Shown here one piece after another: positions 21,873 through 45,981 of a stretch of 64,000 bases of DNA (position 1 is its first letter; every line of letters begins with the position of its first letter). The notes under the pieces were generated by a model. The model made no database searches. It was not told the origin of the DNA and saw only the letters and a list, made by a program, of their open reading frames with translations. The stretch spans positions 124,001 through 188,000 of IMG/VR virus record IMGVR_UViG_3300024503_000015. The stretch is one strand, 5' to 3'. Made by a program: the position numbers and the translations under genes.

Positions 21873-22157
21873 TTAATTATTTAGATACTTTAAATGTGAA
21901 CACGCCAGTAAAAAGAAACTGGCTTCTTTTGGCTCTTCAAAACCAACTTTAATTTTGGTTTGATATTGATTATTTTCTAACACTAAACACTCGCCAATAT
22001 AAAATCGGTGTTTAAGATTTTCGTAAATCCAATCCTTAACGGATGCTACAATATTATATTTTAGATCCAAATAGTAGTAATGGAAATAGGGAGGCGGATC
22101 CTGCACCTCCCTACAGCCTAACACATTAAGTGGATTTATTTTAGCATTATTTGCCAT
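21873..22157 (-). CDS. Hypothetical protein, 94 aa
   Basis: Co-oriented ORF coupled to the VWA gene. Confidence 0.5.
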   Translation of the reverse strand: MANNAKINPLNVLGCREVQDPPPYFHYYYLDLKYNIVASVKDWIYENLKHRFYIGECLVLENNQYQTKIKVGFEEPKEASFFLLACSHLKYLNN

Positions 22158-23335: not shown

Positions 23336-23365
23336 TTATGCTCCGTTTCTTTACTGTATGTTTAT

Positions 23366-23394
23366 ATTATACAGTCACTTCTATACTTTGTCAA
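23366..23394 (-). promoter_or_regulatory. Consensus sigma70 promoter
   Basis: TTGACA-17 nt-TATAAT exact, upstream of the VWA gene with GGAG RBS. Confidence 0.85.
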
Positions 23395-23397
23395 GGT

Positions 23398-23421
23398 TAG
23401 AGGTGCATCTCTGCACCTCTA
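23398..23421 (-). other. 10-bp hairpin with GAGA (GNRA) loop between the AAA and VWA genes
   Basis: TAGAGGTGCA-GAGA-TGCACCTCTA on the minus strand; no U-tract in the transcribed direction. Confidence 0.6.
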
Positions 23422-23427
23422 TTTTGG

Positions 23428-24528: not shown

Positions 24529-24577
24529 TACATGCTCCTGTGTTAAAAATGATTGCAATTAATTTCGCAGTATCATT

Positions 24578-28195: not shown

Positions 28196-29059
28196 TTATG
28201 TTCCCCACTCATTTTTAAAGAGTGGAACTTGTAATCTATCGCTGTAGCGTAAACCGTTTTTCATTGCTAGTTCCGCTACACGCCTGTTGTTAAGAGTATA
28301 GACACTTTCAACGCCACCCACGGGCATAAGATATATAGGACCGGTAAAACCATTTTCTCTATAAATGTCAGCAGTTTCAATTGCTTCCTCCGCATCTTCT
28401 TCTGTGGCCACTACAAATTTAAGATATGTATGACCGTATTCTTCGTATTCACAAACTACGTCTGGACGAATTGCTTCGTGACGTTCTTCACCGGAGCAAC
28501 TTAATTTAGCACTAACACTAAATGTAACTTCTCGCCAAAAATCTTTATCGCTGTGATATTTCCATGTGTGCAGATATTGCTTGAACTCGTCGGTGAGTTT
28601 TTGAGTACCATTCGTTTCAAATGTAATCTCTTTTAAGTTTGTCATTTTTGGATGGTCGAGCAAGTCTGGATACGCTCGTTGCCATCCAAGCAAAGGTTCC
28701 CCTCCGGTAATGACCAAGTGTTCGTCTCGCCATTCGTTGAAGGGTAGAATCTCTGCGATCCTGTCTGCGATGGCGTCTGAAGTGAGCATTGGACTAAGAT
28801 CCTTAAAGCGAGGATCCCAACTAGCATAACTATCACAGCCCGTAGATACCAAAGGAAGTTCTTCATATTTTTTATATGGGGTTCGTTCATGTTGGATTGC
28901 AATATCTTCAACTTCTGTACTTAGTTCACCTTTTGGTAATCCAAAGCCAGCACATTTAAAGTTACAACCAAATGTTCTCAAGAAAACAGACGGTACACCC
29001 ATGTAACGTCCTTCGCCTTGAATACTATAAAATAATTCTGCAATTTTTAATTTGCTCAT
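28196..29059 (-). CDS. queE: 7-carboxy-7-deazaguanine synthase (radical SAM)
   Basis: ELFYSIQGEG, FLRTFGCNFKC...(insert)...CDS, ITGGEPLL, FETNGT, SDRLQVPLF. Confidence 0.92.
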   Translation of the reverse strand: MSKLKIAELFYSIQGEGRYMGVPSVFLRTFGCNFKCAGFGLPKGELSTEVEDIAIQHERTPYKKYEELPLVSTGCDSYASWDPRFKDLSPMLTSDAIADRIAEILPFNEWRDEHLVITGGEPLLGWQRAYPDLLDHPKMTNLKEITFETNGTQKLTDEFKQYLHTWKYHSDKDFWREVTFSVSAKLSCSGEERHEAIRPDVVCEYEEYGHTYLKFVVATEEDAEEAIETADIYRENGFTGPIYLMPVGGVESVYTLNNRRVAELAMKNGLRYSDRLQVPLFKNEWGT

Positions 29060-29520
29060 ATACAGTCACCTTGTTCTGCCAGTTTACTGGCGCTTGATTT
29101 TTCTTTACCTGCTTGTCTAAACAGTTTAACATCTTTAATTGCAGATTTCAATGTTTCGGCATAATTCAGTGCCTGTTGTTCAGTCATAGAAATAGTTGTT
29201 TCAACGGTCACTGCACCAGTTGTCCAAAGTTGCCAAGTTACTTTCAAACGAGTCCATAGCCCATTAATTAAATCTTTAACAAACCAATCAATCTCTTGTA
29301 GATACGGACTATCAATATCGTATCTTTTTTCAACTAGTTCAGACCAATAATCAGTTTTAGCAGTTGCGTAAATGTTTACATTAATACCAGTCTCACTAGA
29401 TTCAACTTCTACATTGTGATCGTGATACTCTTGCCCGCAACCGCAGACAATTTGATAAAACTTAGTGTCGCCAAAGTCACTGCGTTTTAGAATTCCTTCT
29501 GCTGGTTGCTCTAATTTCAT
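29056..29520 (-). CDS. Hypothetical protein, 154 aa
   Basis: Co-oriented; CxC...H at the N-terminus. Confidence 0.5.
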   Translation of the reverse strand: MKLEQPAEGILKRSDFGDTKFYQIVCGCGQEYHDHNVEVESSETGINVNIYATAKTDYWSELVEKRYDIDSPYLQEIDWFVKDLINGLWTRLKVTWQLWTTGAVTVETTISMTEQQALNYAETLKSAIKDVKLFRQAGKEKSSASKLAEQGDCI

Positions 29521-29843
29521 TGTTTGAACATCTCTAAGTTAATAATTTTAGCAACACGCTCGCCAATATCTTCTCCGTTAGGAATCACATAAGTTTGACT
29601 TTCGTGTCTATCTTTACGGTCATCGTAGTGTCTTACATTTAAAATTTTACCACCGACGGCGGTGCTTAATTCGAAAGTGATTCGTCCTTCACCTTCTGCA
29701 CGACCGCGTTCTATTGCTTGTGCTGTTCCGATTGCCAATTTATACTCTCTTTCTTTCATAGTTGCTTCTTCGTACTTGTGTCGATTATCCCACATATCGC
29801 GGACTTTTCCATACAACCATTTATCGACAAAATTCATTTGCAT
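29517..29843 (-). CDS. Hypothetical protein
   Basis: GGAG RBS before the ATG at 29843. Confidence 0.5.
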   Translation of the reverse strand: MQMNFVDKWLYGKVRDMWDNRHKYEEATMKEREYKLAIGTAQAIERGRAEGEGRITFELSTAVGGKILNVRHYDDRKDRHESQTYVIPNGEDIGERVAKIINLEMFKQ

Positions 29844-30049
29844 GTCTCCAACCATTTATCAAGAATATTTACAGCATCATTGAAATCGATACCATATACT
29901 TCTGCACTGATAACATTGTCTTTGATTTGTATATCAAACGGAACAGTTCCGTTAAATCGAAAATCTTCGGGAACATCTGTCTCTACAATATACTTGTGTA
30001 GATTTTTTGCTCTATTAATTAAATTAGTCGCCATGTCTACTGAATTCAT
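29834..30049 (-). CDS. Hypothetical protein, 71 aa
   Basis: Coupled ATGA overlap with folE. Confidence 0.45.
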   Translation of the reverse strand: MNSVDMATNLINRAKNLHKYIVETDVPEDFRFNGTVPFDIQIKDNVISAEVYGIDFNDAVNILDKWLETCK

Positions 30050-30744
30050 CTTGGTGCAAACTCCTGTTGTAGTTTAATGTTATCAAAGAACTCTTTCTTT
30101 GTACCAGCATCGTCTTTGAACGCACCTTTAAGTACAGTAGTTTGAGTTAATGAACTATGTGCCATAATGCCACGATTCTCACAGCATCCATGAACTGCCT
30201 GAATATAAACGCCAATATCACTTGCGCCAGTGGCCTTTTCAATTTCTCTGGCTATGTCGTTACACAATTCTTCCTGTAAGGTACCACGACGAGCGCACCA
30301 TTGCGCGATTCGTGTGTATTTTGACAGCCCAATGAGTTTTTGGGCGGCGATGATTCCGATGTAGGCAACACCAGAAACAGGCTGATGATGATGACTACAC
30401 ATACTACGAAGCTCACTCCTAACCACCAACATACCCTCATAACGATCTTCGCTATCGTTAGGAAACGCTGTTGCATCTGGTGCTGGTTCATATCTTCCTG
30501 CCATTATTTCGTTAAAGTACATTTTTGCTAATCGTTTCGCTGTACCGTGCGAGTTAGGATCTGTCTCTCTGTCAATAAGAAGTTTGTCTAAAACACTTTC
30601 AAATGCCTCAGTTGCTTCTTTGATTAGTTGTTCTTTGACTAGATCAGATTCGATGTATTCGCTGATGTTATCTCCTGCCCAGAATCTTTTTCCGTCTAGG
30701 ACCATCTTTTCGCGAATCGCTTGTGCTAAATTTTTTTCTGACAT
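30046..30744 (-). CDS. folE: GTP cyclohydrolase I
   Basis: SMCSHHHQP, GLSKYTRI, RRGTLQE, AVHGCCENRG zinc-ligand motifs. Confidence 0.95.
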   Translation of the reverse strand: MSEKNLAQAIREKMVLDGKRFWAGDNISEYIESDLVKEQLIKEATEAFESVLDKLLIDRETDPNSHGTAKRLAKMYFNEIMAGRYEPAPDATAFPNDSEDRYEGMLVVRSELRSMCSHHHQPVSGVAYIGIIAAQKLIGLSKYTRIAQWCARRGTLQEELCNDIAREIEKATGASDIGVYIQAVHGCCENRGIMAHSSLTQTTVLKGAFKDDAGTKKEFFDNIKLQQEFAPR

Positions 30745-30781
30745 TATTTCTCCGAGTTATAGACGAGGATGTCTATGTAAT

Positions 30782-30810
30782 ATAATATAGTTTATTTAGG
30801 TTTTTGTCAA
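30782..30810 (-). promoter_or_regulatory. sigma70 promoter with embedded CTAAATA, upstream of folE
   Basis: TTGACA-17 nt-TATTAT; spacer AAAACCTAAATAAACTA. Confidence 0.7.
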
Positions 30811-31023
30811 CTAAGTGCGTATACTTTTCTTATCAATATGTTGTTGTTCATATCGTAATCTACGGCATTCTTCCCTGACTGTATTAGGGATATCAGGATG
30901 CCATTCTGCCATCCCGCAATCATAGATGCGAGTTTGACTACCGTAATCGGTAAAAATAAGAATAAGCACAGCCGCTATTAAAGCGACTGCGGCTGTAATC
31001 TTTCCGATAATAGTATCCGACAT
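30811..31023 (-). CDS. Small membrane protein, 70 aa
   Basis: N-terminal hydrophobic helix. Confidence 0.5.
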   Translation of the reverse strand: MSDTIIGKITAAVALIAAVLILIFTDYGSQTRIYDCGMAEWHPDIPNTVREECRRLRYEQQHIDKKSIRT

Positions 31024-31211
31024 AAGTCAGCATCCTTTTTTGATTTGAATGTAAATTTCATGTAGTCGTGTTGTGGATGACTTTCGTATCTTCCGCCAGG
31101 TAGGCCAAATACTTCGAGCACCATGGCGCAAGTTTCATTCCACCAAAAACCTGATTGCCCGTCCCAATGGACGTAGATATTATTCTGATCTTCCACTGGT
31201 GCAACTATCAT
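30978..31211 (-). CDS. Hypothetical protein, 77 aa
   Basis: Co-oriented ORF. Confidence 0.5.
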   Translation of the reverse strand: MIVAPVEDQNNIYVHWDGQSGFWWNETCAMVLEVFGLPGGRYESHPQHDYMKFTFKSKKDADLCRILLSERLQPQSL

Positions 31212-31380
31212 TCCAAAGTTCTTGTGCTCTGCGCTTATAGTCTTCTAATTCCCACACGGCTAATTTTTCACGAAATACTTCTTCGCTTAATCCGTGCCAG
31301 CCGATACAGTCTCCTGTAGGACTACGACCACAACCGCAAGTTCCAATTTTCTTTCCTTCTTCAGGTACTCTTACTTGCAT
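31180..31380 (-). CDS. Small CDGSH-type iron-sulfur/zinc-finger protein
   Basis: CGCGRSPTGDCIGWH resembles C-x-C-x2-S...C-D-G-S-H; start MQVRV at 31380. Confidence 0.6.
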   Translation of the reverse strand: MQVRVPEEGKKIGTCGCGRSPTGDCIGWHGLSEEVFREKLAVWELEDYKRRAQELWNDSCTSGRSE

Positions 31381-31744
31381 TTTTATAATTTCCTTTACTT
31401 GGTATAACGTGACGAACCCCGCCACGAGGGTCTTCCATATCACCCTTGCGTCTAGGGATCATGTGTATATGAGGATACATTACTGTTTGGCCAGCAGTCT
31501 CGCCACAGTTTTGTCCGACATTAAAAGCGTCCCAACGTTCAGATTGGACACCATCGAACCCGAACTTGTATGCTCCTTTGAAACATTCGACGATGTTGGT
31601 AAAACGTTCATAGGTTGGCACAAAAAGCAAATGTCCTTCCGTAACTGGGTAGGCATCGTTGAAGACCCAATAGTCTTTTGTTCTGTACTCGATACTAGTC
31701 CATGGTGCTCTGCGTTCATCTAGTGCCCTTTCTAAATCAGTCAT
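31361..31744 (-). CDS. HIT-family nucleotide hydrolase
   Basis: YPVTEGHLLFVP, GQTVMYPHIHMIPR histidine triad; start MTDLE at 31744. Confidence 0.9.
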   Translation of the reverse strand: MTDLERALDERRAPWTSIEYRTKDYWVFNDAYPVTEGHLLFVPTYERFTNIVECFKGAYKFGFDGVQSERWDAFNVGQNCGETAGQTVMYPHIHMIPRRKGDMEDPRGGVRHVIPSKGNYKNASKST

Positions 31745-32292
31745 AACCAAAATTCTTCCCAAGGATAAACAAGCCAACAATCTTCTTGTCGCTTGTCTAC
31801 GGTCCAAACATGATAGTCTGGATCTTTAAACTCACTGCCGTAATTATGTGTTAATACAGCAAAACGAACATTGTCTCCCCATACTTGATTCCATGCTTCA
31901 TCGTTAGGAAAACAACCACTGGGCCAATCTTTCTTAATCCAATTAAGAGTAGATCCTTGATCGTTAATATCGTCTACAATTAAGATTTTCTTTTTAAGAC
32001 GTTCTAAATGTTTGTGATCGCCCCAAATGTGCCTTTCGTCATTGGGAACAACTCCCAAGGCATCTTCGGCCATCCAAAGATTACTTTCGCAATCGTTTTT
32101 ATTATCGCGAAGGCTGACATTAAGTGTGTGCATCTTAATGCCAGTATATTGACTTAGTAAGTTAGCCGGAACAAGACCACCGCGTGTAATACCTACAATA
32201 TAGTCAGGCCTCCAATTATGTTCAGACATTTGGCGAGCAATTTCTAAACATGCGCCTTCAACTTGTGACCAACTGTAGTATACTTTCTTCAT
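31741..32292 (-). CDS. Type I phosphoribosyltransferase (xanthine/guanine PRTase-like)
   Basis: IVGITRGGLVPA and PRPP loop LIVDDINDQGST; C-terminal VYPWE; start MKKVY at 32292. Confidence 0.85.
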   Translation of the reverse strand: MKKVYYSWSQVEGACLEIARQMSEHNWRPDYIVGITRGGLVPANLLSQYTGIKMHTLNVSLRDNKNDCESNLWMAEDALGVVPNDERHIWGDHKHLERLKKKILIVDDINDQGSTLNWIKKDWPSGCFPNDEAWNQVWGDNVRFAVLTHNYGSEFKDPDYHVWTVDKRQEDCWLVYPWEEFWL

Positions 32293-32525
32293 GCAGTTAA
32301 CCCATAGGCCAATGATTGACATTCTTCTTTAGTCATAAAGAAATTATAAGTTTGTGTACCAACAACTTCACCGTCTTTAAGACTTTCTTGAACCATATCG
32401 ATACTAAACAAACCTTTAGGGCTTAGTACTTCGTGTTTCTTTAATGTTAGCCTAAAACCGGCGTGTTCTTTGACAACCATTTCTTTATAAGTATCTCTAA
32501 CTGATTCATGTAGTTCCATCATCAT
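32289..32525 (-). CDS. Hypothetical protein, 78 aa
   Basis: Co-oriented ORF. Confidence 0.5.
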   Translation of the reverse strand: MMMELHESVRDTYKEMVVKEHAGFRLTLKKHEVLSPKGLFSIDMVQESLKDGEVVGTQTYNFFMTKEECQSLAYGLTA

Positions 32526-32958
32526 CTCCTTTAATTGCGTCCCACGTTCTATATTTGGCTAATGCCTTAATATAGTCATCATACATCTTTTTTAACTTTG
32601 GATGCTTCTTTTCTAGTTTAACATCTCGCTCGGGAATTTGCAAGACTTTTTCAATTGTGTTTAACCTTTCTTCTAGGTCAACACCATTTAATACCATTCG
32701 ACCTTTAACTTCTAACTCCGGTGGATCGTTTTTGGCAACCATCACCGGATTGGTAGTAGGATTAGCCCAAGTTACATTTGTACCTGTAGTATAAGTTAAC
32801 GGCACAGATGTAGTGCCGGCTCCGGTTGAAATCGTATATCCACTGCCAGAGCCGCCTGTGCCGTTCGATACTAAAACACTACCTGAACCGGCACCGGAAC
32901 CTGCTATGCCGCCGGCTGTATTAAGTATTACGCTTCCGTGATTGTAAGTATAGCTCAT
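32506..32958 (-). CDS. Hypothetical protein with Gly/Thr-rich N-terminus
   Basis: Co-oriented ORF. Confidence 0.5.
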   Translation of the reverse strand: MSYTYNHGSVILNTAGGIAGSGAGSGSVLVSNGTGGSGSGYTISTGAGTTSVPLTYTTGTNVTWANPTTNPVMVAKNDPPELEVKGRMVLNGVDLEERLNTIEKVLQIPERDVKLEKKHPKLKKMYDDYIKALAKYRTWDAIKGDDDGTT

Positions 32959-33376
32959 TTGGTATCCATTTATTATTAACGAGAAATCCCCATTCTCTCT
33001 TTTGCGGACCTGGCATAAAAAGTGTCCAACACTCTACGTTGGGATCAATTTCAATTCTATGAAAACTGTTGGCACTACAAATTCTAAAGTGTCCAGGCTT
33101 TCTCCATTTGGCAATTTCACAGACCTTTACTCCCTGGCTGTTAAATTGAGGAATCCATTCCCAATAGCCACCTTTTAGAATAAGTGTGGCATAAGGCCAT
33201 GGGTGATCATGCACATCATCTGGATCACCTTTATGAAACTTGTGTAAGAATACATTAAATGGAAACCATTTACGATCCTTTAAAAATAGATAATAACGTG
33301 TAAGTAACGGCTCGTCACAGGTACGATCCATAATAATACGCTTGCGACCGAGACGTTCTAACAGTTTTAATATCAT
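32921..33376 (-). CDS. Cupin-fold metal-binding protein
   Basis: LHKFH...VHDHPW...LKGGYWE...FHRI...WTLF double-stranded beta-helix pattern. Confidence 0.7.
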   Translation of the reverse strand: MILKLLERLGRKRIIMDRTCDEPLLTRYYLFLKDRKWFPFNVFLHKFHKGDPDDVHDHPWPYATLILKGGYWEWIPQFNSQGVKVCEIAKWRKPGHFRICSANSFHRIEIDPNVECWTLFMPGPQKREWGFLVNNKWIPNELYLQSRKRNT

Positions 33377-34446
33377 ACAAGTCTTTCTAAGAGTCCATTT
33401 GCAGAAAAGAAATTTTCAGTTAAGTCTTGAGTTTGTTTTCTAAGTTGTGGTAAAAACTTTTCATAGTTATCCATATACTGGATAATCTTTGCACATATTT
33501 CTGGACGGTGTGCTTTATATGCTTCGAAACTTTCAGTCCATTCACTAGGATACTTAAAAGTATCATAGCCCATTTCACTGTAACTAAGTCTATCTGGCAC
33601 CATAGGAATAGCATCTACAACAGCGCCTTCATACCAACTAATCCCTAATGTCTCTTGTAAGTTTGCAGAGAACACTAATTTCGATTCGCCTAACAAGTTA
33701 TGATATTCATTTTTTGTTAGTTGTTGATCCTGACAGACTACGAACTCGTACTGTGGCAAGTGTTCTTTTAAATCTCTAAAAATTTCAACTTGCTTCTCGG
33801 GTGCGATGCGATGAGGGAAAAGAATTAAATCACGTTTTTTCATCCCTTTATATGGAGTTAATGTATCTTCCATATACTCCATTGGCCAACCTGTGCGTAC
33901 AATTTTTCCTTTATCGATATATGATGCTTTTGCAGTATCGTAATCTATGTTTAAAAGATTATGACAAAACATTTCAATATGGAATGTTGTAGCAAAGTAG
34001 TTATGATCTATAGCATGAAAGAAACTCTTTTCAGCATTTCTGACCCAAGGAGCATCGCCAATTAGACGACCTAAAAAGTCCTGTGGATCGTAACTACCGG
34101 CATGCCATAGTGCGTGAATAGTTACAGGAATCTGTAACAGTTCACTCATATACTTTAGGTTGATGATACCAGGGTGCCAAGCATCAGTAAAGATGAAGTG
34201 ATCATTAGGAGCCACTGATCCGGCGCAAAACAACCTACCCATTTGCTCAACTTGAGCAGACTTGTATATATTGGTGCCACCAAAATTAAGAAAAGCACCA
34301 GGAGTAGTGGCTGAAGGAATATCCGTAGGCCCAGATAAAACTTGAACATCGTGTCCTCTCTTTCTCAGGATAGCCGGTAGGTGGGTCTTCCACTGCGCTG
34401 TATAGCGTGTTTCTACCGGCTCAAGGTCTACTAAGTAGACGGTCAT
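33373..34446 (-). CDS. GT-B glycosyltransferase
   Basis: C-terminal FPHRIAPEKQ and FSANLQETLGISWYEG resemble the GT-B R/K and E-x7-E donor-binding motifs. Confidence 0.75.
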   Translation of the reverse strand: MTVYLVDLEPVETRYTAQWKTHLPAILRKRGHDVQVLSGPTDIPSATTPGAFLNFGGTNIYKSAQVEQMGRLFCAGSVAPNDHFIFTDAWHPGIINLKYMSELLQIPVTIHALWHAGSYDPQDFLGRLIGDAPWVRNAEKSFFHAIDHNYFATTFHIEMFCHNLLNIDYDTAKASYIDKGKIVRTGWPMEYMEDTLTPYKGMKKRDLILFPHRIAPEKQVEIFRDLKEHLPQYEFVVCQDQQLTKNEYHNLLGESKLVFSANLQETLGISWYEGAVVDAIPMVPDRLSYSEMGYDTFKYPSEWTESFEAYKAHRPEICAKIIQYMDNYEKFLPQLRKQTQDLTENFFSANGLLERLV

Positions 34447-34676
34447 TGGCGACCATTCCTGTAGTTGTTATTGTACCCGTTGTTATTACGGGGACGATTT
34501 TCAAATCGTCTGTCGTTGTTATAACGACGAGGACGCTTAGACGCCTCGTAAGCCTGCCAAGTTTTACTTTGGCGGTTATACAAGTCTGCCTCATTGTAAG
34601 GCAGAAGGTTGAATCTGCAAAAATCTAGCAGATTGTCAAGATCGTCAAAAATTTGAACGACTTCTTTTTTCATCAT
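34443..34676 (-). CDS. Hypothetical protein, Arg/Asn-rich tail
   Basis: Co-oriented, coupled overlap. Confidence 0.5.
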   Translation of the reverse strand: MMKKEVVQIFDDLDNLLDFCRFNLLPYNEADLYNRQSKTWQAYEASKRPRRYNNDRRFENRPRNNNGYNNNYRNGRQ

Positions 34677-34684
34677 TGTTTCCT

Positions 34685-35080
34685 TTAGTATTTGATGAAT
34701 GAACCATTTTCTCCGTCTTCGGAGACCTCAATCCAAATCTCGCGATTTGGATACTTCTTGCTAATGATGTCATGTAATTCGTCAGACATCATTTCACAAC
34801 TCTTGTAGTCAAGGCTTATAGTGGCACCTTGACCATTATACAACGACTCGAGCCATCGTTTGAATTGGATGAATTCGATGTCCCTGTCATTGTGTTGCAC
34901 ACTGATCCACACCCTGAAATGAAAGATGTGGCGATGAGGGTGACCCAAAAACGATACGTCATATTCGTCTCCTGTTGCTAGATTAGGATCTGTTAGTGCC
35001 GCAGGATACTTATGGATACCTTCTTTGCGGAAAGTTACCCAGATCATTTTGTTTGGTCTAATGTCTTGTTTGATAATCAT
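34685..35080 (-). CDS. QueD-like T-fold protein with LxxxHRHxF motif (DpdL-like candidate)
   Basis: FLGHPHRHIFHF in place of QueD CxxxHGH; SCEM substrate-Glu motif; start MIIKQ at 35080. Confidence 0.7.
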   Translation of the reverse strand: MIIKQDIRPNKMIWVTFRKEGIHKYPAALTDPNLATGDEYDVSFLGHPHRHIFHFRVWISVQHNDRDIEFIQFKRWLESLYNGQGATISLDYKSCEMMSDELHDIISKKYPNREIWIEVSEDGENGSFIKY

Positions 35081-35616
35081 GTTGGTGTATCTTGAGTGTA
35101 CAAATCCCAATGAGTATACTTGTCTTTAGTCATTAGGCTTTGTAAATGATGTGTCCACACACCTGGATTTGTAGCACCCCAAGTTCGGTCATCCAGTTTG
35201 AGTGTGGCATTGTAGTTGAGTTGATTAATGTAGGGTAACTTGACACTAATCATAGGTACAAACTTGGGATATTCGTTATAAGCAGACTCTAGTACGCCTT
35301 CGATGTGTTCAACACCAAAGTCTAGAGCTACCCAATAGCCTGCTTTTAGACAGCCTATAATAACTTCGTCCCATGCTTTGTATTCTTCGTGTGAAATACT
35401 TTTAGGATTAAAACTTTGACTAGTGCCAAAGTAAATTTGTTTAATGCGTTTGTTTTCGTCTAAGTATGCTTGTGTGTCACCAGCAATACGTAGTATTTCT
35501 TCTAGCGGAGGAGTGCCTACTACAAATAGTGTATACATACCATAGCAAATAGTATGTTCGACTTCGTAGCCTGTAAAGTAGACAATGTCTTGTCTTTCTT
35601 CAGTGTTTAATCCCAT
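35077..35616 (-). CDS. Uncharacterised protein embedded in the deazaguanine cluster, 179 aa
   Basis: Coupled to both neighbours; no motif recognised. Confidence 0.6.
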   Translation of the reverse strand: MGLNTEERQDIVYFTGYEVEHTICYGMYTLFVVGTPPLEEILRIAGDTQAYLDENKRIKQIYFGTSQSFNPKSISHEEYKAWDEVIIGCLKAGYWVALDFGVEHIEGVLESAYNEYPKFVPMISVKLPYINQLNYNATLKLDDRTWGATNPGVWTHHLQSLMTKDKYTHWDLYTQDTPT

Positions 35617-36497
35617 TTAATATAACCTCTGCTATAACCATTTGGACGATCCACACCATCCGCAAATGCTTGTTGCCATTCTGTGTTACGATTATAACCT
35701 TTTGTCCAGAAAGAATCAACCTCTAGTTTACCGTTTTCAATCATCCAACGTGCTTCAAACATAGCACCAATAAATTCTTCTGTTCTTGGACTTGGTTTAA
35801 CTGTAGTAACAGCCTTCCAAAGTTGTTGTTGTGCTTCTTCTTTACTTACTGCTTTACCAACAGCATCAATGATTACTGCATTGTTATTTAGATTAATGTC
35901 GGTACCTAGTTGATATTTTCCAGATAAATCTACTATCAAATCGTAACTGTCGGTAGTACCTAACAGTAACGCATCTCCCCAAAGTTCCTGATTACTAGAA
36001 CCTAGTACATCTACTTCAAGTTCTGGAAAATGATGTGCCAGGTTATTAAAAACTACCCATGCAAGGAAACCACTACCTAGGATTAAGCATTTACCATTTT
36101 GTCTACGTTCAAAAAGAGTATACGCTTGTCTAATACAGTTAACACCACAGGCCACTGGTTCTAAAATGTAACGTGGATGTAGTTCTAAAACTGTTACAAA
36201 CTCACCGTCACGACAGTTGTAATAATCTGCGTATGCTGGTTCGCCGCGGGTAGCAACATAATCGCCTACTTTAACACCTAATACACTGGCACCGACTTTA
36301 GTTACGATTCCTAGACCTTCGTGACCTTGCATGTGTAGTGGTAAAGGTCCAAAGTTGCCCTGCATCATATCTATGTCACTGCGACATACACCAGTCATAA
36401 CTGCTTTAACTTCAATTTCAGTTGACGTAGGTTCTGGCTTTGCATATTCTACTTCTTCAAAGTAACCTTGTCCAGTTGTTTGTAGACAGCGTGTCAT
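35607..36497 (-). CDS. Zn-dependent medium-chain dehydrogenase/reductase
   Basis: GVCRSD, GHEGLG catalytic Zn ligands, ILGSGFLA Rossmann; no structural-Zn Cys loop; start MTRCL at 36497. Confidence 0.85.
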   Translation of the reverse strand: MTRCLQTTGQGYFEEVEYAKPEPTSTEIEVKAVMTGVCRSDIDMMQGNFGPLPLHMQGHEGLGIVTKVGASVLGVKVGDYVATRGEPAYADYYNCRDGEFVTVLELHPRYILEPVACGVNCIRQAYTLFERRQNGKCLILGSGFLAWVVFNNLAHHFPELEVDVLGSSNQELWGDALLLGTTDSYDLIVDLSGKYQLGTDINLNNNAVIIDAVGKAVSKEEAQQQLWKAVTTVKPSPRTEEFIGAMFEARWMIENGKLEVDSFWTKGYNRNTEWQQAFADGVDRPNGYSRGYIKWD

Positions 36498-37372
36498 AGT
36501 TTTTCTATTCTTTCGTGTATCCAAAGGTCAATTTCTAACTGTACTTTCCAGTACTCGTCATTATTTAGGTTTTCTACAGCATCTTTAATCATATTTAGGT
36601 ACGCTTCTTCTGGACACCAGCCTAACTCAAATACATCTTTGGTATTATCTTGATTAATAAATGTAATAGCACTACGTTCAACAGTCATACTGCGCCAGTT
36701 AGCACGGCAGTTCCATTTAGAACCAAATCCAATGTGACACTGGTCGTCTACATCATAAGTTCCATTTGGGTTTACAGTACCATACTCTGTGCTTTCGATA
36801 TCTTTTAACAGCCATGATTGTATAGATGATTCGCCGTTAACTTTTTCTATGCGCCAGTCTGGATGTAGTGCAATATACAAACTTAATAAGTGTGGCATTA
36901 AGTCCCTACTAACTCCGCCAAATGCTAGTTTGCGTGTAGTAAACCAACTACCTGGGCTAGGAATACAGTTCTTTCTAATCCATTCGATGTCTACATTCTT
37001 TGCTACTTTAGCCTTTTCCTGTAATTCTGCAATATTGTCACGCCACATATTATTTTTAACCATCATAAATCGTGTGCGTGGAAATCTTTTACATAATTTA
37101 GCCCATTCGTTTCTATTAATCAGTCCAGGCTTTTCAATAAAGACAATTTTACTGATAGGAGCCAGTTTAACGGCTAATTCTAAATGCGTAAAATTTGGTG
37201 TGCAAATATGTACGGTGTCAAAAGACCCGTGAAGTAATATGGCTGGTTCTATACTAGGGAAGTCGGCATTTTTATTAATGTCTGTATCGACAGTACAAAC
37301 TTCATAACCTAATTGAGTTAGGACAGATTTATATAACTGTCCTATTCCCATTCCTACAACTAAACTTTTCAT
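36494..37372 (-). CDS. Gfo/Idh/MocA-family oxidoreductase
   Basis: VVGMGIG, VHICTPNFTH, FIEKP, GGVSRDLMPH. Confidence 0.87.
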   Translation of the reverse strand: MKSLVVGMGIGQLYKSVLTQLGYEVCTVDTDINKNADFPSIEPAILLHGSFDTVHICTPNFTHLELAVKLAPISKIVFIEKPGLINRNEWAKLCKRFPRTRFMMVKNNMWRDNIAELQEKAKVAKNVDIEWIRKNCIPSPGSWFTTRKLAFGGVSRDLMPHLLSLYIALHPDWRIEKVNGESSIQSWLLKDIESTEYGTVNPNGTYDVDDQCHIGFGSKWNCRANWRSMTVERSAITFINQDNTKDVFELGWCPEEAYLNMIKDAVENLNNDEYWKVQLEIDLWIHERIEKL

Positions 37373-37626
37373 CTATATGTTGGTAGTTCGTTAACACATT
37401 TAATAAGAGATCCGGATTGTTTGCCCGCTAATTGATGTAGCGCATAATCCGGAGAGGATACACAGGCTTCGTGCCCATTGAATTTATCTGCTAGGGCAAT
37501 GGTGTTGCCAGTTTCTGCAAATTTAATTACAAGATAGTAGTCGTTTGGACCCACGGCATCTGCCGTTTTATAAAACAAACCAAAACTTAATACTGCTAAA
37601 ACACCAATGCCTAGTAGTTTTTTCAT
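37369..37626 (-). CDS. Small exported protein, 85 aa
   Basis: Signal peptide MKKLLGIGVLAVLSFG; two Cys. Confidence 0.55.
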   Translation of the reverse strand: MKKLLGIGVLAVLSFGLFYKTADAVGPNDYYLVIKFAETGNTIALADKFNGHEACVSSPDYALHQLAGKQSGSLIKCVNELPTYR

Positions 37627-39170
37627 TTTACGCCTTCTTCGAGTTCGTCAAGTTTAGCAATTTCATCATCGGTAAATTCTTCACCGTGCTCTAATTGTAC
37701 ACTCTCTTCCTCTACTTCGTCAAACAGTTTGGCAAATTGTGTACTTGCGTTTACAGTCTTCTTACCTACTGCTCCGCGAGTTCCAATAATACTTTGCCAA
37801 AATTTATTATACTCTTCAACGACTTTGTCTGCTTCTGCACGACTACTAGTAGCAAAAATGGCTTCTACTACATCTTTAAAGAATAGTCTATCAAACCGTT
37901 CTTCTACTAACATAGCAGGAACAATGCCCAAATCGTATTGACGATTGGCTTCTTGTACAGCATTAATGTGCATCCAAACATTATGGCCCATTAAGATAGC
38001 GTAACTAAAACTATCCCACGAAGTTTTACCTTCCTTGCCAATCTTGTTTAGATCCCCGGGCCCGTAAATACAAACATCTTTAATTTGAACCCCGTCAATA
38101 ATTGGACTATTGTCAAAGTTTTTAAAATGTCCGTCCTGTACTACTGCATCGCGGAATAGTCTAGTATCTTTACTATATTTTTTATTATCGATACTAGGTA
38201 ACATTCTATATACCCACTTAGTTCTGTCTTGTGTTTCTGTTTGAACGTATACTTGTCCGTTTGCAGTTGCTAAGAATGGACTAGCACAGTCGAAACTAAT
38301 TGTAAAGTTAGGATTGTGATACTTGCGTACAGCACGTTGAATGTCTGTTAATAAACAAGCCCACTCTAATTTACTAGTACCTAAGAAGTGCATCCAGTCT
38401 TGTTTGCCCTGTTCAAGTAATCCGTCAAATCGTAATGCTACTAGGCGTTTTAATACCAAGTGTACATCACACATATTCTGACCACCCATGGCCCAACCGT
38501 TAAATGCACGGTCACCGTAGACAGTAGGATCGCAGTACTTCTTCATTCGGTCATACCAATCGTCTGCATCGGTATGATTTTCACCTTGGAGAACGTTTAA
38601 GAATTTACAATTACCATTGCGATTGTTTACAAACCAATCGTTGTTAATGTAAGTACCTTGAACTGCTTCTGCGTATGTAGTAATGCCTGTGGCTTTTTGT
38701 CCAGCAGGGCTACGAGCTACCCAAGCAGGGATATCAAGACACATACCATAGTCCATTAGACTATCCATCCACTTAAGAACCTGTTCACGTTTCTTTTGTG
38801 CTTTAGGACAGTTGGGATTCTTCCAATCGCCTTCCCATACACCTTTACCAATTTGGAAACCACCGGAGTCGCCTAGTACCCAACTAGTACTGCGATCTCT
38901 ATTACGAAACATATCTTCGCTGTGATCAACTTTGTTAAGGTCTAGATTAGCATGACCTGCACTATACAAGCAGTGGTCATAGTAGAACGCACCTTTTTCC
39001 GGTTCTAAGTAGTTTAGACTTTCTACTCCGTTTTTAAAACTAGCAGGAACTCTTGCCGGATCAACATAGTTTCCATATCTTTGTTTACCTATAAAGGTAC
39101 TATAGAAACCGCTAGTTGCCGGCAAAAAGTATGCGTAGTCGTTTTGTGTTGCGGTTAAATTTTTATTCAT
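37623..39170 (-). CDS. TGT/DpdA-like base-exchange transglycosylase
   Basis: GDSGGFQIG (TGT catalytic Asp motif), LDIP, NVLQG, GWAMGG, HFLG, SFDCASP, late GHN; no CxCxxC Zn cluster of tRNA TGTs visible. Confidence 0.82.
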   Translation of the reverse strand: MNKNLTATQNDYAYFLPATSGFYSTFIGKQRYGNYVDPARVPASFKNGVESLNYLEPEKGAFYYDHCLYSAGHANLDLNKVDHSEDMFRNRDRSTSWVLGDSGGFQIGKGVWEGDWKNPNCPKAQKKREQVLKWMDSLMDYGMCLDIPAWVARSPAGQKATGITTYAEAVQGTYINNDWFVNNRNGNCKFLNVLQGENHTDADDWYDRMKKYCDPTVYGDRAFNGWAMGGQNMCDVHLVLKRLVALRFDGLLEQGKQDWMHFLGTSKLEWACLLTDIQRAVRKYHNPNFTISFDCASPFLATANGQVYVQTETQDRTKWVYRMLPSIDNKKYSKDTRLFRDAVVQDGHFKNFDNSPIIDGVQIKDVCIYGPGDLNKIGKEGKTSWDSFSYAILMGHNVWMHINAVQEANRQYDLGIVPAMLVEERFDRLFFKDVVEAIFATSSRAEADKVVEEYNKFWQSIIGTRGAVGKKTVNASTQFAKLFDEVEEESVQLEHGEEFTDDEIAKLDELEEGVK

Positions 39171-39739: not shown

Positions 39740-40474
39740 TTATTTGCTCTGTGCTGGCAAGATGTAATCATATACAGCAACACCGCTGTCAACAGTAATC
39801 TGCATAGCACCTGCATCTGCAATCTTCATAGTAATATTACCATCGAGATTTAAAATGCTTTGTACTTGTGCAACAGGCCATGACCATGTGTGCTTTAACT
39901 TGCCGCCAACATCGTGTTGGAATACAAAAGAACCTGCGTGTGTACTTGCATCACCGAAGAAGAATACAAGATTGTTATCTTCTGTACGAACTTGGAAAAC
40001 AGTTTCTTCACTGTGTGCCGCACTTTGTAACTTCAAACGACCAATTGCCGCCATGCTTGGTTCAAACTCAACTTCCCATGTTGCACCTTTGAACTTAACA
40101 GATTTTAGTTTTTCGTTAATAAGTTCTGATGCCATGAAACGATAATCGTTTTGGAAGTCACCTGCTTGGTTTTCAAAGTGCAAACCTACTGGAACTGTGT
40201 TGCCGTTACGTTCCGCAGTAACTACATCGATCTTTGCGTTTTCTTTATACTCTGGATTCTTCAAGTGAAGATTTAACTTGTCCAAGTTTGGCATACCAAA
40301 TGTGCCATCAAACTCTGATACTGGCTTGTGTGCAGTAGCAGTAACAATAACGCTACGATCCTCTGCCATTGATTCGATAGTTGTGCTATCTTTAGCACCT
40401 GTAATTTTTACCAAAGGCAAAAAGCCTAGGCTATGTGTATGTGCTACGATGTCGGTTAGAATATCTTTAATCAT
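39740..40474 (-). CDS. DNA polymerase sliding clamp (T4 gp45-like)
   Basis: 244 aa, adjacent to the polymerase; FGMPNLDKL...L and C-terminal YxYILP pattern of phage clamps. Confidence 0.7.
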   Translation of the reverse strand: MIKDILTDIVAHTHSLGFLPLVKITGAKDSTTIESMAEDRSVIVTATAHKPVSEFDGTFGMPNLDKLNLHLKNPEYKENAKIDVVTAERNGNTVPVGLHFENQAGDFQNDYRFMASELINEKLKSVKFKGATWEVEFEPSMAAIGRLKLQSAAHSEETVFQVRTEDNNLVFFFGDASTHAGSFVFQHDVGGKLKHTWSWPVAQVQSILNLDGNITMKIADAGAMQITVDSGVAVYDYILPAQSK

Positions 40475-45941: not shown

Positions 45942-45981
45942 AGCCATCTTCCTCTGGGTAAACTGGATATTCGTTTTCCAT
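45907..45981 (-). CDS. Micro-ORF, 24 aa (MENEYPVYPEEDGYDRPRNPYSPV)
   Basis: ATG overlaps the dps stop (TAATG), suggesting translational coupling. Confidence 0.5.
   Translation of the reverse strand: MENEYPVYPEEDGYDRPRNPYSPV

What the first reader, a model, noticed from the sequence alone, without database searches (positions are those of the whole stretch)
28196..39170. Extended 7-deazaguanine neighbourhood that may build an undescribed hypermodified base
Seen: QueE, FolE, a T-fold protein and a 515 aa TGT/DpdA-like protein (DSGGFQ, VLQG, GWAMGG, HFLG, FDCASP) lie in one co-oriented run next to the clamp and DNA polymerase, interleaved with a glycosyltransferase, two oxidoreductases, a cupin, a PRTase and a HIT. 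Established: FolE-QueD-QueE make CDG from GTP, and phage DpdA exchanges guanine in DNA for 7-deazaguanine bases, protecting against restriction. Inference: the extra tailoring enzymes exceed what known phage dPreQ0/dG+/dADG/dPreQ1 pathways need, suggesting a further-decorated base.
Basis: partly seen in the sequence, partly recalled or inferred. Interest (0 to 1): 0.85.

Follow-up and report, generated by a model that had tools for sequence, protein, structure and literature searches.

The report
Phage 7-deazaguanine DNA module with sugar-tailoring genes
A giant freshwater phage carries, beside its DNA polymerase, genes that probably swap guanine in its DNA for a 7-deazaguanine base, plus a conserved sugar-transferring enzyme that known pathways of this kind do not need, so the final base may be new.

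Summary
The "T-fold protein" is DpdL, the predicted 7-carboxy-7-deazaguanine decarboxylase of the 2023 dDG pathway. It is not QueD. The window holds no QueD and no QueC.

The 515-aa protein is a TGT-fold enzyme with all three catalytic aspartates. It belongs to a large family that Pfam, PHROGs and NCBIfam do not recognise, and Pseudomonas jumbo phage PA5oct is a member.

In 28 complete related modules, DpdA-like, a 179-aa unknown, DpdL, a GT4 glycosyltransferase, FolE and QueE are always present. The purine PRTase is in 89%. Cupin (68%), HIT (43%) and the GFO+ADH pair (39%) are optional.

The GT4 also sits beside DpdL or DpdA in six other phage lineages. Relatives fill the variable slots with sugar dehydratases, aminotransferases, a UDP-sugar dehydrogenase and Trp-halogenase-type enzymes.

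New here: the DpdA-like tail carries the same short motif as the C-terminus of the cognate DNA polymerase, in five lineages. This suggests clamp tethering at the replication fork.

Verdict: a new variant of the known DpdL/dDG system. A further-decorated, probably glycosylated, base is plausible but unproven.

The parts
37623..39170 (-). DpdA-like DNA guanine transglycosylase (515 aa), a divergent TGT-superfamily member
   Evidence: AF2 model pLDDT 90.9. The top 50 Foldseek PDB hits are all tRNA-guanine transglycosylases, E 1.6e-6. hhalign vs E. coli Tgt gives 89% probability and aligns D101/D146/D294 with D89/D143/D264. hhalign vs ACP17 DpdA gives 96.5%. No Pfam, PHROG or NCBIfam hit.
37716..37745 (-). 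Putative clamp-binding peptide STQFAKLFDE (residues 476-485) in the disordered tail of the DpdA-like protein
   Evidence: It lies in the pLDDT<50 segment 465-491. It has the same F..LF[DE] motif as the polymerase C-terminus. The motif co-varies between polymerase and DpdA in five lineages.
40532..40555 (-). C-terminal peptide TFNQLFEF of the DNA polymerase (putative clamp-binding tail)
   Evidence: The role of the gp43 C-terminal tail in T4/RB69 is from PMC3012046.
40529..43198 (-). Family-B DNA polymerase (context; start of the conserved block)
   Evidence: Pfam DNA_pol_B 6.5e-37 and exonuclease domain 1.2e-18.
39740..40474 (-). 244-aa candidate sliding clamp (identity not verified)
   Evidence: 33% identical (1e-41) to the Phosso protein annotated as sliding clamp. 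Present in 28 of 28 modules. No PDB sequence match.
36494..37372 (-). GFO/IDH/MocA oxidoreductase (optional accessory, always paired with the next gene)
   Evidence: Pfam 1.9e-5. Best PDB hit is DgpA, a glycoside 3-oxidase, 2.6e-7. Present in 39% of complete modules.
35607..36524 (-). MDR zinc-alcohol-dehydrogenase-like oxidoreductase (optional accessory)
   Evidence: Pfam ADH_N 5e-12. PDB ADH and threonine dehydrogenase hits near 1e-9. It co-occurs 11/11 with the GFO gene.
35077..35616 (-). Conserved 179-aa protein of unknown fold and function (core component)
   Evidence: Present in 28 of 28 modules. Homologues in PA5oct (41%) and inside the ACP17 cluster (29%). AF2 pLDDT 88.9 but no PDB fold match (best E 0.04) and no Pfam hit.
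34685..35110 (-). DpdL, a T-fold QueD paralogue predicted to be a CDG decarboxylase; the true start is probably the ATG near 35047
   Evidence: Signature LGHPHRHIF. tblastn: ACP17 4e-36, phiST 5e-9. Invariant His and Glu set. The definition is from PMC10516641.
34443..34676 (-). 77-aa protein with an Arg/Asn-rich tail, conserved between DpdL and GT
   Evidence: Present in 89% of complete modules. No family match.
33373..34446 (-). GT4-type (GT-B) glycosyltransferase (core component)
   Evidence: 28 of 28 modules. 41% identical to the PA5oct and 36% to the ACP17 neighbour of DpdA/DpdL. PF00534 in 6 of 7 homologues. R..EK and EX7E kept.
32921..33376 (-). Small metal-binding cupin (accessory)
   Evidence: PHROG 'cysteine dioxygenase' 4.6e-35. 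No PDB or NCBIfam match. Present in 68% of modules.
31741..32322 (-). 6-oxopurine phosphoribosyltransferase (near-core)
   Evidence: Pfam 2.2e-13, NCBIfam XPRT 1.4e-12, PDB 1vdm 1e-11. Present in 89% of modules. A homologous XGPRT sits in the BUCT-ZZ01 cluster.
31361..31744 (-). HIT-family nucleotide hydrolase/transferase (accessory)
   Evidence: Pfam HIT 1.1e-7. NCBIfam HinT 1e-9. Present in 43% of modules. The start was set from homologues.
30046..30744 (-). GTP cyclohydrolase I (FolE)
   Evidence: Pfam 1.4e-38. NCBIfam FolE 3.6e-39. 28 of 28 modules.
29056..29520 (-). 154-aa protein with a conserved Cys pair, between FolE and QueE; unknown function, not QueD
   Evidence: Alignment A4 shows only two invariant Cys and no QueD motif. 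Present in 54% of modules.
28196..29059 (-). QueE-like radical SAM enzyme (CDG synthase)
   Evidence: PHROG 2.1e-54. NCBIfam QueE models 1e-10 to 3e-13, below cut-off. 28 of 28 modules by construction of the set.

Best explanation
**What it is.** The block from the polymerase to QueE is a DpdL-type 7-deazaguanine DNA-modification module. It belongs to an uncultured 330-kb freshwater jumbo phage.

**Proposed pathway.**
1. FolE converts GTP (family membership shown here).
2. QueD makes CPH4. QueD is not in the window, so it must come from elsewhere in the genome or from the host (inferred).
3. QueE makes 7-carboxy-7-deazaguanine (family membership shown here).
4. DpdL removes the carboxyl group to give 7-deazaguanine. 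Membership is shown here. The activity is only predicted in the literature.
5. The 515-aa DpdA-like enzyme exchanges guanine in DNA for this base. The fold and catalytic aspartates are shown; the substrate is inferred.

**Where it acts.** I infer that the DpdA-like enzyme works at the replication fork. Its disordered tail repeats the peptide at the C-terminus of the polymerase, and that kind of tail binds the sliding clamp in T4-like phages.

**The extra genes.**
- The purine PRTase most simply recycles the displaced guanine to GMP (inferred).
- The always-present GT4 then adds a sugar to the base or to its precursor (inferred). The 179-aa unknown may act with it.
- The GFO+ADH pair, the cupin and the HIT are optional tailoring steps. 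Related phages replace them with other tailoring genes.
For: **DpdA-like enzyme**
- Confident model and TGT fold.
- Catalytic Asp alignment with E. coli Tgt.
- Link to ACP17 DpdA. BFVD hits to phage transglycosylases.

**DpdL**
- Signature and homology, with the definition in PMC10516641.

**Conservation**
- Fixed gene order in 80 loci.
- DpdA, 179, DpdL, GT, FolE and QueE are in 28 of 28 complete modules. PRT is in 89%.
- GT4 lies next to DpdL or DpdA in PA5oct, ACP17, Phosso, BUDD/X1, BCSR5 and BUCT-ZZ01.
- GT4 family membership.

**Tailoring genes in relatives**
- Sugar 4,6-dehydratase/epimerase, DegT aminotransferase, UDP-sugar dehydrogenase, B12 radical SAM and Trp-halogenase-type genes fill the same slots.
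- The GFO protein is closest to the glycoside 3-oxidase DgpA.

**Shared tail motif**
- The motif is shared by the polymerase and the DpdA tail in five lineages.
- In the whole BUCT-ZZ01 genome it occurs only in the polymerase, DpdA and one GT4.

**Experimental support from a relative**
- PA5oct DNA resists G-site restriction enzymes. It is also attacked by nucleases that sense hypermodified bases (PMC12191111).
- dDG could not be reconstituted from DpdL and DpdA alone.
Against: - No chemistry is available for this phage or for any GT-bearing relative.
- phiST makes plain dDG with DpdL and no such GT.
- 7-deazaguanine offers no obvious hydroxyl or amine at C7 for a sugar. A C- or N-glycosidic link, or a different DpdL product, would be needed.
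- The window's own GT has no polymerase-type tail. The tailed GT4 of BUCT-ZZ01 is a different GT4.
- Sugar-enzyme clusters in jumbo phages have been read as tools for remodelling host surface polysaccharides (PMC7824862).
- QueD is missing from the window.
- The clamp identity of the 244-aa protein is unverified.
- DpdL activity has never been demonstrated.
Confidence: 0.5

Rival explanations
1. Plain dDG system. The module makes only 2'-deoxy-7-deazaguanosine in DNA, as in phiST. The GT4, the 179-aa protein, the oxidoreductases, the cupin and the HIT serve something else, such as host surface polysaccharide remodelling, virion glycosylation or general metabolism. They merely travel with the replication block.
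For: - phiST has DpdL and dDG but no such GT.
- RHph_I1_18 and Ahp1 have DpdL without a detectable GT nearby.
- Jumbo-phage GT and sugar clusters have been interpreted as polysaccharide diversification.
- The accessory genes are patchy, at 39-68%.
Against: - The GT4 is in 28 of 28 modules. It is adjacent to DpdL or DpdA in six further lineages whose DpdAs have diverged beyond BLAST recognition.
- The module sits inside the replication gene block.
- One GT4 in BUCT-ZZ01 carries the polymerase-type tail.
- DpdL and DpdA alone did not give dDG in E. coli.
Confidence: 0.3
2. Pre-replicative route. The purine PRTase turns the free 7-deazaguanine base into a nucleotide. After phosphorylation and reduction, the polymerase incorporates it. 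The TGT-fold protein has a side role.
For: - A 6-oxopurine PRTase is in 89% of modules and also in the BUCT-ZZ01 cluster.
- From my own knowledge: toyocamycin biosynthesis uses a PRTase on a deazapurine base.
- Complete G replacement, as reported for DpdA3 phages, is easier to picture before replication.
Against: - The DpdA-like enzyme keeps all three catalytic aspartates across 52 distant relatives. It also carries the polymerase-type tail.
- No kinase, dGTP-specific pyrophosphatase or similar gene is in the module.
- The PRTase is absent from PA5oct's local cluster and from ACP17's cluster.
Confidence: 0.1
3. tRNA enzyme. The 515-aa protein is a tRNA-guanine transglycosylase that modifies phage or host tRNA, and the DNA is unmodified.
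For: - The closest solved structures are tRNA TGTs.
- Jumbo phages often carry tRNAs.
Against: - It is not recognised by the Pfam TGT model.
- No conserved Cys cluster for the TGT zinc site is seen in the family alignment.
- It is closer to phage DpdA than to Tgt.
- It sits between the polymerase/clamp genes and the base-synthesis genes, and it carries the polymerase-type tail.
- The relative PA5oct has restriction-resistant DNA with modified G.
Confidence: 0.04

Closest known systems
[quoted passage not shown] 2023, PMC10516641)
   Same: - FolE and QueE are present with a DpdL carrying LxxxHRHxF, and there is no QueC.
- A very divergent TGT-fold transglycosylase is encoded near the replication genes.
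- ACP17 shares DpdL (57%), the GT4 (36%) and the 179-aa protein (29%).
   Different: - The transglycosylase here is a separate sequence family of about 515 aa. BLAST does not link it to the ACP17 type. hhalign gives 96.5% against ACP17 and only 62% against phiST DpdA3.
- QueD is not in the module.
- The GT4, the 179-aa protein and the PRTase are conserved extras that the paper does not describe.
- phiST lacks the GT.
Deazaguanine system of Pseudomonas jumbo phage PA5oct (Wroclawvirus)
   Same: - Same order: polymerase, 244-aa protein, DpdA-like (33% identical over the full length), GT4 (41%), DpdL (54%), QueE, FEN/RNase H.
- A 'deazaguanine synthesis/incorporation system' was noted in PMC7824862.
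- Its DNA resists G-site restriction enzymes (PMC12191111).
   Different: - PA5oct has no GFO+ADH pair, cupin, PRTase or HIT in the local cluster, and its 179-aa homologue lies 30 kb away.
- The modified base of PA5oct has not been identified in the papers found. The GT link is not discussed there.
Glucosylation of 5-hydroxymethylcytosine in T-even phages (alpha- and beta-glucosyltransferases)
   Same: A phage-encoded GT-B-fold enzyme would add a sugar to an already non-canonical DNA base. The sugar chemistry varies between related phages, as expected in an arms race with restriction systems.
   Different: - The base is a pyrimidine with a hydroxymethyl acceptor, made before replication.
- Here the base is a 7-deazapurine put in by base exchange, with no obvious acceptor group.
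- The GT family is different (GT4).
Galactosyl- and mannosyl-queuosine in vertebrate tRNA (from my own knowledge, not tested here)
   Same: A glycosyltransferase decorates a 7-deazaguanine derivative that is already in a nucleic acid. As I recall, the mannosyltransferase is a GT4-type enzyme.
   Different: - The substrate is tRNA, not DNA.
- The sugar goes on the cyclopentenediol of queuosine, which this module cannot make.
- No homology was tested.
PIP-box / C-terminal clamp-binding tail of T4 and RB69 DNA polymerase gp43 (PMC3012046)
   Same: A short aromatic-acidic peptide sits at the end of a flexible tail. It is shared between the polymerase and other enzymes that work on DNA behind the fork.
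   Different: - No DNA base-modifying transglycosylase or glycosyltransferase has been reported with such a tail, as far as my searches show.
- The motif here (F..LF[DE]) is not the canonical Qxxhxxaa.
- Binding was not tested.

Membership tests
TGT superfamily (tRNA-guanine / DNA-guanine transglycosylases) | TIM-barrel TGT fold | tested here: met
   AF2 pLDDT 90.9. The top 50 Foldseek PDB hits are all TGTs, probability 1.0, E 1.6e-6, TM about 0.5 on the target.
TGT superfamily (tRNA-guanine / DNA-guanine transglycosylases) | Three catalytic/base-binding aspartates (E. coli D89, D143, D264) | tested here: met
   hhalign aligns D101 (DSGGFQ), D146 (LDIP) and D294 (FDCASP) with them. All three are invariant in 52 distant relatives.
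Bacterial tRNA-guanine transglycosylase (Pfam PF01702) | Match to the curated family model | tested here: not met
   No hit for the window protein. Only 3 of 52 relatives hit, best E 0.011. A profile search of PDB sequences finds no TGT.
Bacterial tRNA-guanine transglycosylase (Pfam PF01702) | Zinc-binding Cys/His cluster after the barrel | tested here: not met
   No invariant or near-invariant Cys in alignment A1. The only conserved His is H261 of HFLG.
Phage DpdA (DNA 7-deazaguanine transglycosylase) | Detectable homology to a DpdA used in published work (ACP17 DpdA; phiST DpdA3) | tested here: inconclusive
   hhalign vs ACP17 DpdA gives 96.5%, E 7e-10. Against phiST DpdA3 it gives only 62%. 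BLASTP is not significant.
Phage DpdA (DNA 7-deazaguanine transglycosylase) | Encoded with 7-deazaguanine synthesis genes in a phage | tested here: met
   Same co-oriented block as FolE, QueE and DpdL, in 28 of 28 complete modules.
Phage DpdA (DNA 7-deazaguanine transglycosylase) | Exchanges guanine in DNA for a 7-deazaguanine base | not testable with these tools
   Needs enzyme assay or nucleoside mass spectrometry. The only indirect support is PA5oct's restriction-resistant DNA.
DpdL (predicted CDG decarboxylase) | Signature LxxxHRHxF in place of the QueD motif CxxxHGH | tested here: met
   LGHPHRHIF in the 141-aa protein. L, H, H and F are invariant in 10 lineages.
DpdL (predicted CDG decarboxylase) | Homology to the founding members (phiST CGPG_00067, ACP17 DpdL) | tested here: met
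   tblastn: ACP17 57% identity, 4e-36; phiST 34%, 5e-9.
DpdL (predicted CDG decarboxylase) | T-fold relationship to QueD | tested here: inconclusive
   hhalign of the DpdL profile against one QueD sequence gives only 19%. The link rests on the HHpred result in PMC10516641.
DpdL (predicted CDG decarboxylase) | Decarboxylates CDG to 7-deazaguanine | not testable with these tools
   Also unproven in the literature.
QueD (CPH4 synthase) | A gene with the CxxxHGH motif or homology to phage QueD in the window | tested here: not met
   tblastn with three phage QueDs and a six-frame motif scan find none. A QueD is present in the module of relative L092.
QueE (CDG synthase) | Match to QueE family models | tested here: inconclusive
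   PHROG QueE-like 2.1e-54 over the full length. NCBIfam QueE equivalogs match at 1e-10 to 3e-13 but far below cut-off. Pfam Radical_SAM is below cut-off.
GTP cyclohydrolase I (FolE) | Match above the curated cut-off | tested here: met
   Pfam 132.6 bits against a cut-off of 27.
GT4 glycosyltransferases (GT-B fold) | Match to Glycos_transf_1 and a conserved EX7E with R/K phosphate-binding motif | tested here: met
   PF00534 in 6 of 7 homologues, best 6.8e-12, though not for the window protein alone. PDB GT4 structures hit at 1e-4. R213, E217, K218 and E273 are invariant.
GT4 glycosyltransferases (GT-B fold) | Acts on DNA or on the 7-deazaguanine base | not testable with these tools
   Support comes only from synteny and from the polymerase-type tail on a different GT4 in BUCT-ZZ01.
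6-oxopurine phosphoribosyltransferases | Type I PRTase domain with purine-PRTase relatives | tested here: met
   Pfam 50.2 bits against a cut-off of 26.3. The best PDB hits are purine, xanthine-guanine and hypoxanthine-guanine PRTases.
Clamp-binding (PIP-like) tail peptides | The same short motif as the cognate polymerase C-terminus, in a disordered tail | tested here: met
   Window, PA5oct, ACP17, BUDD and BUCT-ZZ01 pairs. The tail segment has pLDDT below 50.
Clamp-binding (PIP-like) tail peptides | Physical binding to the sliding clamp | not testable with these tools
   Inferred from T4/RB69. The clamp identity of the 244-aa protein is itself unverified.

The most novel reading that the evidence does not exclude
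This abundant freshwater jumbo-phage clade, and cultured relatives such as PA5oct, ACP17 and BUCT-ZZ01, replace guanine with a sugar-bearing 7-deazaguanine. That would be the first glycosylated purine-type base in any DNA. A transglycosylase riding on the sliding clamp through a polymerase-like tail would install it at the replication fork. Related phages would vary it by swapping tailoring genes: sugar dehydratase/aminotransferase, UDP-sugar dehydrogenase, oxidoreductase pair, and flavin halogenase.
Probability: 0.4. Interest if true: 0.9.

Novelty: new variant of a known kind. Interest (0 to 1): 0.7.

Why it matters
- **An open gap.** 7-Deazaguanine DNA modifications are a main phage defence against restriction and CRISPR. 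The dDG branch is the least understood. Its decarboxylase is only predicted, and the pathway could not be rebuilt in E. coli.
- **Candidate missing parts.** A GT4 and a 179-aa unknown always travel with DpdL and DpdA in this clade. The GT4 does so in six other lineages too. These two genes are therefore candidates for the missing parts, and they raise the chance of a new sugar-bearing base.
- **A possible mechanism for complete replacement.** The polymerase-like tail could explain how a post-replicative base exchanger replaces every guanine.
- **Testable now.** Cultured phages (PA5oct, ACP17, BUCT-ZZ01) carry the same genes.
- **Size of the family.** Both searches returned their limits: about 8000 clusters at 90% identity and 1000 at 50%. 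None of the hits listed carries a functional name.

Tried and rejected
**Searches that found nothing for the 515-aa protein**
- Pfam, PHROGs, NCBIfam and a PDB sequence search.
- A 52-sequence profile against PDB sequences. Only structure prediction and profile-profile comparison worked.

**Other dead ends**
- Megablast of the region against 50,697 phage records found no match.
- QueD search: tblastn with ACP17, phiST and L092 QueD plus a motif scan found none.
- I considered the 154-aa protein between FolE and QueE as a divergent QueD. I rejected this because it has only two conserved Cys and no His motif.
- I considered the Phosso 'glycosylase' as a homologue of the 179-aa protein. There is no similarity.
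- The fold search for the 179-aa protein gave nothing significant, and Pfam on 41 members gave nothing.
- The cupin has no PDB relative.
- hhalign of the DpdL profile against one QueD sequence was weak.
- The clamp identity of the 244-aa protein could not be confirmed by PDB sequence search.
- The genome-contig scan with the alignment failed for lack of a conserved stretch. The scan with the single protein gave only two MAG contigs.
- I did not attempt a DpdA-subfamily tree. Identities below 20% would make it unreliable.
- The supplementary tables of Cui et al. are not held. I therefore could not check whether PA5oct-type proteins were already filed under DpdA3.

Full report
**1. What is in the window**

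All genes from about 20 kb to 64 kb are on the minus strand. Reading in the direction of transcription, the block runs as follows.
- Family-B DNA polymerase, 40529-43198.
- A 244-aa protein, 39740-40474.
- The 515-aa protein, 37623-39170.
- A GFO/IDH/MocA oxidoreductase, then an MDR alcohol-dehydrogenase-like protein.
- A 179-aa unknown, then a 141-aa T-fold protein, then a 77-aa basic protein.
- A 357-aa glycosyltransferase-like protein.
- A cupin, a purine PRTase and a HIT protein.
- FolE (Pfam 1.4e-38).
- A 154-aa unknown.
- A QueE-like radical SAM enzyme (PHROG 2e-54).

Downstream lie a 2OG-Fe(II) oxygenase and a FEN/RNase H-type nuclease. The window comes from a 330,125-bp ENA metagenome contig. 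No phage record is similar at the DNA level.

**2. The 515-aa protein**

Pfam, PHROGs, NCBIfam and PDB sequence searches find nothing. A 52-sequence profile also fails against PDB sequences.

Structure and profile comparison do work.
- An AlphaFold model built on 52 distant relatives is confident (pLDDT 90.9).
- Its 50 best PDB matches are all tRNA-guanine transglycosylases (E 1.6e-6, probability 1.0).
- Profile-profile comparison with E. coli Tgt gives 89% probability. It aligns D101, D146 and D294 with the catalytic D89, D143 and D264. These three aspartates are invariant in the family.
- The family is nearer to the DpdA of Acidovorax phage ACP17 (96.5%, E 7e-10) than to Tgt.
- The link to phiST DpdA3 is weak (62%).
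- No conserved cysteine cluster for the TGT zinc site is seen.

The family is very large and unnamed. Both searches hit their reporting limits: 7982 of the 8000 candidates scored at 90% identity, and 1000 representatives at 50% identity. Its cultured members are PA5oct-like Pseudomonas jumbo phages (33% identity over the full length), Sinorhizobium phage Phosso and a Vibrio phage.

**3. The T-fold protein is DpdL, not QueD**

It carries LGHPHRHIF. This is the LxxxHRHxF signature that Cui et al. 2023 give for DpdL, the predicted 7-carboxy-7-deazaguanine decarboxylase behind 2'-deoxy-7-deazaguanosine (dDG) in phiST.

It matches DpdL of ACP17 (57%, 4e-36) and of phiST (34%, 5e-9). The His and Glu set is invariant in ten lineages.

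No QueD and no QueC is in the window (Pfam). A relative, L092, does carry a QueD inside its module.

The module is therefore the DpdL type.

**4. Which extra genes are really linked**

I fetched 80 related loci from IMG/VR. The gene order is fixed.

| Component | Share of the 28 loci that reach from DpdA-like to QueE |
|---|---|
| DpdA-like, 179-aa protein, DpdL, GT, FolE, QueE | 100% |
| PRTase | 89% |
| 77-aa protein | 89% |
| Cupin | 68% |
| 154-aa protein | 54% |
| HIT | 43% |
| GFO+ADH pair (always together) | 39% |
| 2OG oxygenase | 4% |

The GT is a GT4-type enzyme.
- Six of seven diverse homologues hit PF00534, best 6.8e-12.
- The profile hits solved GT4 structures.
- The R..EK and EX7E motifs are kept.

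The GT also lies next to DpdL or DpdA in six other phage groups: PA5oct (41% identity), ACP17 (36%), Phosso, Xanthomonas phages BUDD/X1, Burkholderia phage BCSR5 and the T4-like cyanophage BUCT-ZZ01. The transglycosylases of these groups have diverged beyond BLAST recognition.

The 179-aa protein is also in PA5oct and inside the ACP17 cluster. Its confident model matches no solved fold.

phiST, RHph_I1_18 and Ahp1 have DpdL without this GT.

**5. The variable slots hold tailoring enzymes**

Related phages place different enzymes in the same slots.
- **L092** (DpdA-like 62% identical) has a divergent GT4 after DpdL, then an NDP-sugar 4,6-dehydratase/epimerase (8e-56) and a DegT-type aminotransferase fragment.
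- **L061 and L063** carry a similar gene set: a sugar epimerase/dehydratase, a B12 radical SAM enzyme and a DegT fragment. Only the L061 copies were scanned against Pfam.
- **L010, L013 and L032** carry a UDP-glucose/GDP-mannose dehydrogenase. Only the L010 copy was scanned.
- **L042 and L017** carry a Trp-halogenase-family enzyme (8e-99 and 4e-30).
- **L064 and L077** carry a class-III aminotransferase. Only the L064 copy was scanned.

The window's GFO protein is closest to DgpA, which oxidises the sugar of a glycoside (2.6e-7). BUCT-ZZ01 has two GT4 genes around DpdA and DpdL.

This pattern fits a conserved scaffold with changing decoration. It does not prove that the scaffold is the DNA base.

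**6. A shared tail motif (new observation)**

The DpdA-like protein has a disordered segment at residues 465-491. Within it lies STQFAKLFDE. The DNA polymerase ends in TFNQLFEF.

On the coding strand of the window, only these two proteins have this motif near their C-terminus. The motif changes together in the two proteins across lineages.

| Phage | Polymerase | DpdA (and GT4) |
|---|---|---|
| PA5oct | HFDSLFGW | SFNSLFDV |
| ACP17 | SLDDLFE | TLDELFE |
| BUDD | SLESLFG | SLEELFG |
| BUCT-ZZ01 | TLDDFFS | SLDSFFD; second GT4 SLEDFFND |

In the whole BUCT-ZZ01 genome only those three of 176 ORFs end this way.

Among the 80 loci, 70 of 77 polymerase ends and 57 of 79 DpdA tails have F..[LMI]F. 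Many distant family members end the same way.

In T4 and RB69 the polymerase C-terminal tail binds the sliding clamp (PMC3012046). I therefore infer that DpdA is tethered to the clamp and works just behind the fork. In BUCT-ZZ01 one GT4 would be tethered too. Binding was not tested. The clamp identity of the 244-aa protein rests only on a depositor's annotation of its Phosso homologue.

**7. Most likely mechanism**

- **Shown here:** family membership of FolE, QueE-like, DpdL, the TGT-fold enzyme, GT4 and the purine PRTase; conserved synteny; and the shared tail motif.
- **From the literature:**
  - FolE, QueD and QueE make CDG.
  - DpdL is predicted to give 7-deazaguanine.
  - DpdA enzymes exchange guanine in DNA.
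  - PA5oct DNA resists G-site restriction enzymes and is sensed as hypermodified.
  - PA5oct was listed as having a deazaguanine incorporation system.
- **Inferred:**
  - The base is inserted at the fork.
  - The PRTase recycles displaced guanine to GMP, which feeds FolE again.
  - The GT4, perhaps with the 179-aa protein, adds a sugar to the base or its precursor.
  - The GFO+ADH pair, the cupin and the HIT tailor that sugar or its donor.

The weak point is chemical. 7-Deazaguanine has no obvious acceptor group, and phiST makes plain dDG without a GT.

**8. Rivals**

- **Plain dDG with unrelated sugar genes (0.3).** phiST and the reading of jumbo-phage sugar clusters as surface remodelling support it. 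The cross-lineage GT synteny argues against it.
- **Pre-replicative nucleotide route through the PRTase (0.1).** The intact catalytic residues and the tail of the DpdA-like enzyme argue against it.
- **tRNA-only enzyme (0.04).** Context, the tail motif and the PA5oct DNA data argue against it.

**9. Novelty and verdict**

The core is a known kind of system: the DpdL/dDG pathway of 2023, and the PA5oct system noted in 2021 and 2025. New here are:
- the recognition of this large unnamed transglycosylase family;
- the conserved GT4, 179-aa protein and PRTase partners;
- the swap-in tailoring genes;
- the polymerase-like tail.

I rate it a new variant of a known kind, with interest 0.7. Nucleoside mass spectrometry on cultured relatives would settle it.

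Noticed in passing
L042:12704-14242 and L017:6918-8135 (IMG/VR relatives): Flavin-dependent Trp-halogenase-family genes (Pfam 8e-99 and 4e-30) sit inside the module, between the DpdA-like (or ADH) gene and the 179-aa gene. A halogenase next to enzymes that make an electron-rich pyrrolopyrimidine base hints at a halogenated 7-deazaguanine.
   Followed up: partly
L085:4001-5344 (Synechococcus phage BUCT-ZZ01): A second GT4 (447 aa) beside DpdA ends in SLEDFFND. This is the same tail motif as the phage's polymerase and DpdA. Only these three ORFs in the whole genome have it.
   Followed up: yes
L061:12763-14541, L063:9468-11273, L064:12164-13393, L077:9508-10737: Relatives carry a B12-binding radical SAM enzyme (L061; L063 by matching size and N-terminus) or a class-III aminotransferase (L064; L077 likewise) inside the module. 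Neither has a counterpart in the window.
   Followed up: partly
window 85-12567 (+): One giant open reading frame of 4160 aa on the opposite strand to the rest of the region.
   Followed up: no
It is present in only 1 of 28 related modules, so it is probably not a conserved partner.
   Followed up: partly
window 37369-37626 (-): An 85-aa ORF with a hydrophobic, signal-peptide-like N-terminus is wedged between the DpdA-like gene and the GFO gene. It is found in almost no relative.
   Followed up: no
window 34443-34676 (-): A 77-aa protein with an Arg/Asn-rich low-complexity tail is conserved between DpdL and GT in 89% of modules. It could bind nucleic acid.
   Followed up: no
window 32506-32958 (-): A 150-aa Gly/Ser/Thr-rich protein. 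Relatives have different low-complexity proteins of 110-160 aa at the same position.
   Followed up: no
window 19362-20682 (-) and 22157-24558 (-): A thymidylate synthase plus dihydrofolate reductase pair, and a MoxR-type AAA ATPase next to a VWA/metallopeptidase protein. Both are typical large-phage auxiliary sets.
   Followed up: no
window 45981-46415 (-) and 50008-51753 (-): A ferritin-like protein, and a 581-aa protein with an N-terminal deoxyribonucleotidase (NT5C) domain.
   Followed up: no
L092 and L093 (genome contigs): The only cellular-genome hits are MAG contigs binned as Haliscomenobacter and Polynucleobacter. Both are freshwater bacteria, and the contigs are probably phage DNA. 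This hints at the habitat but not firmly at the host.
   Followed up: partly
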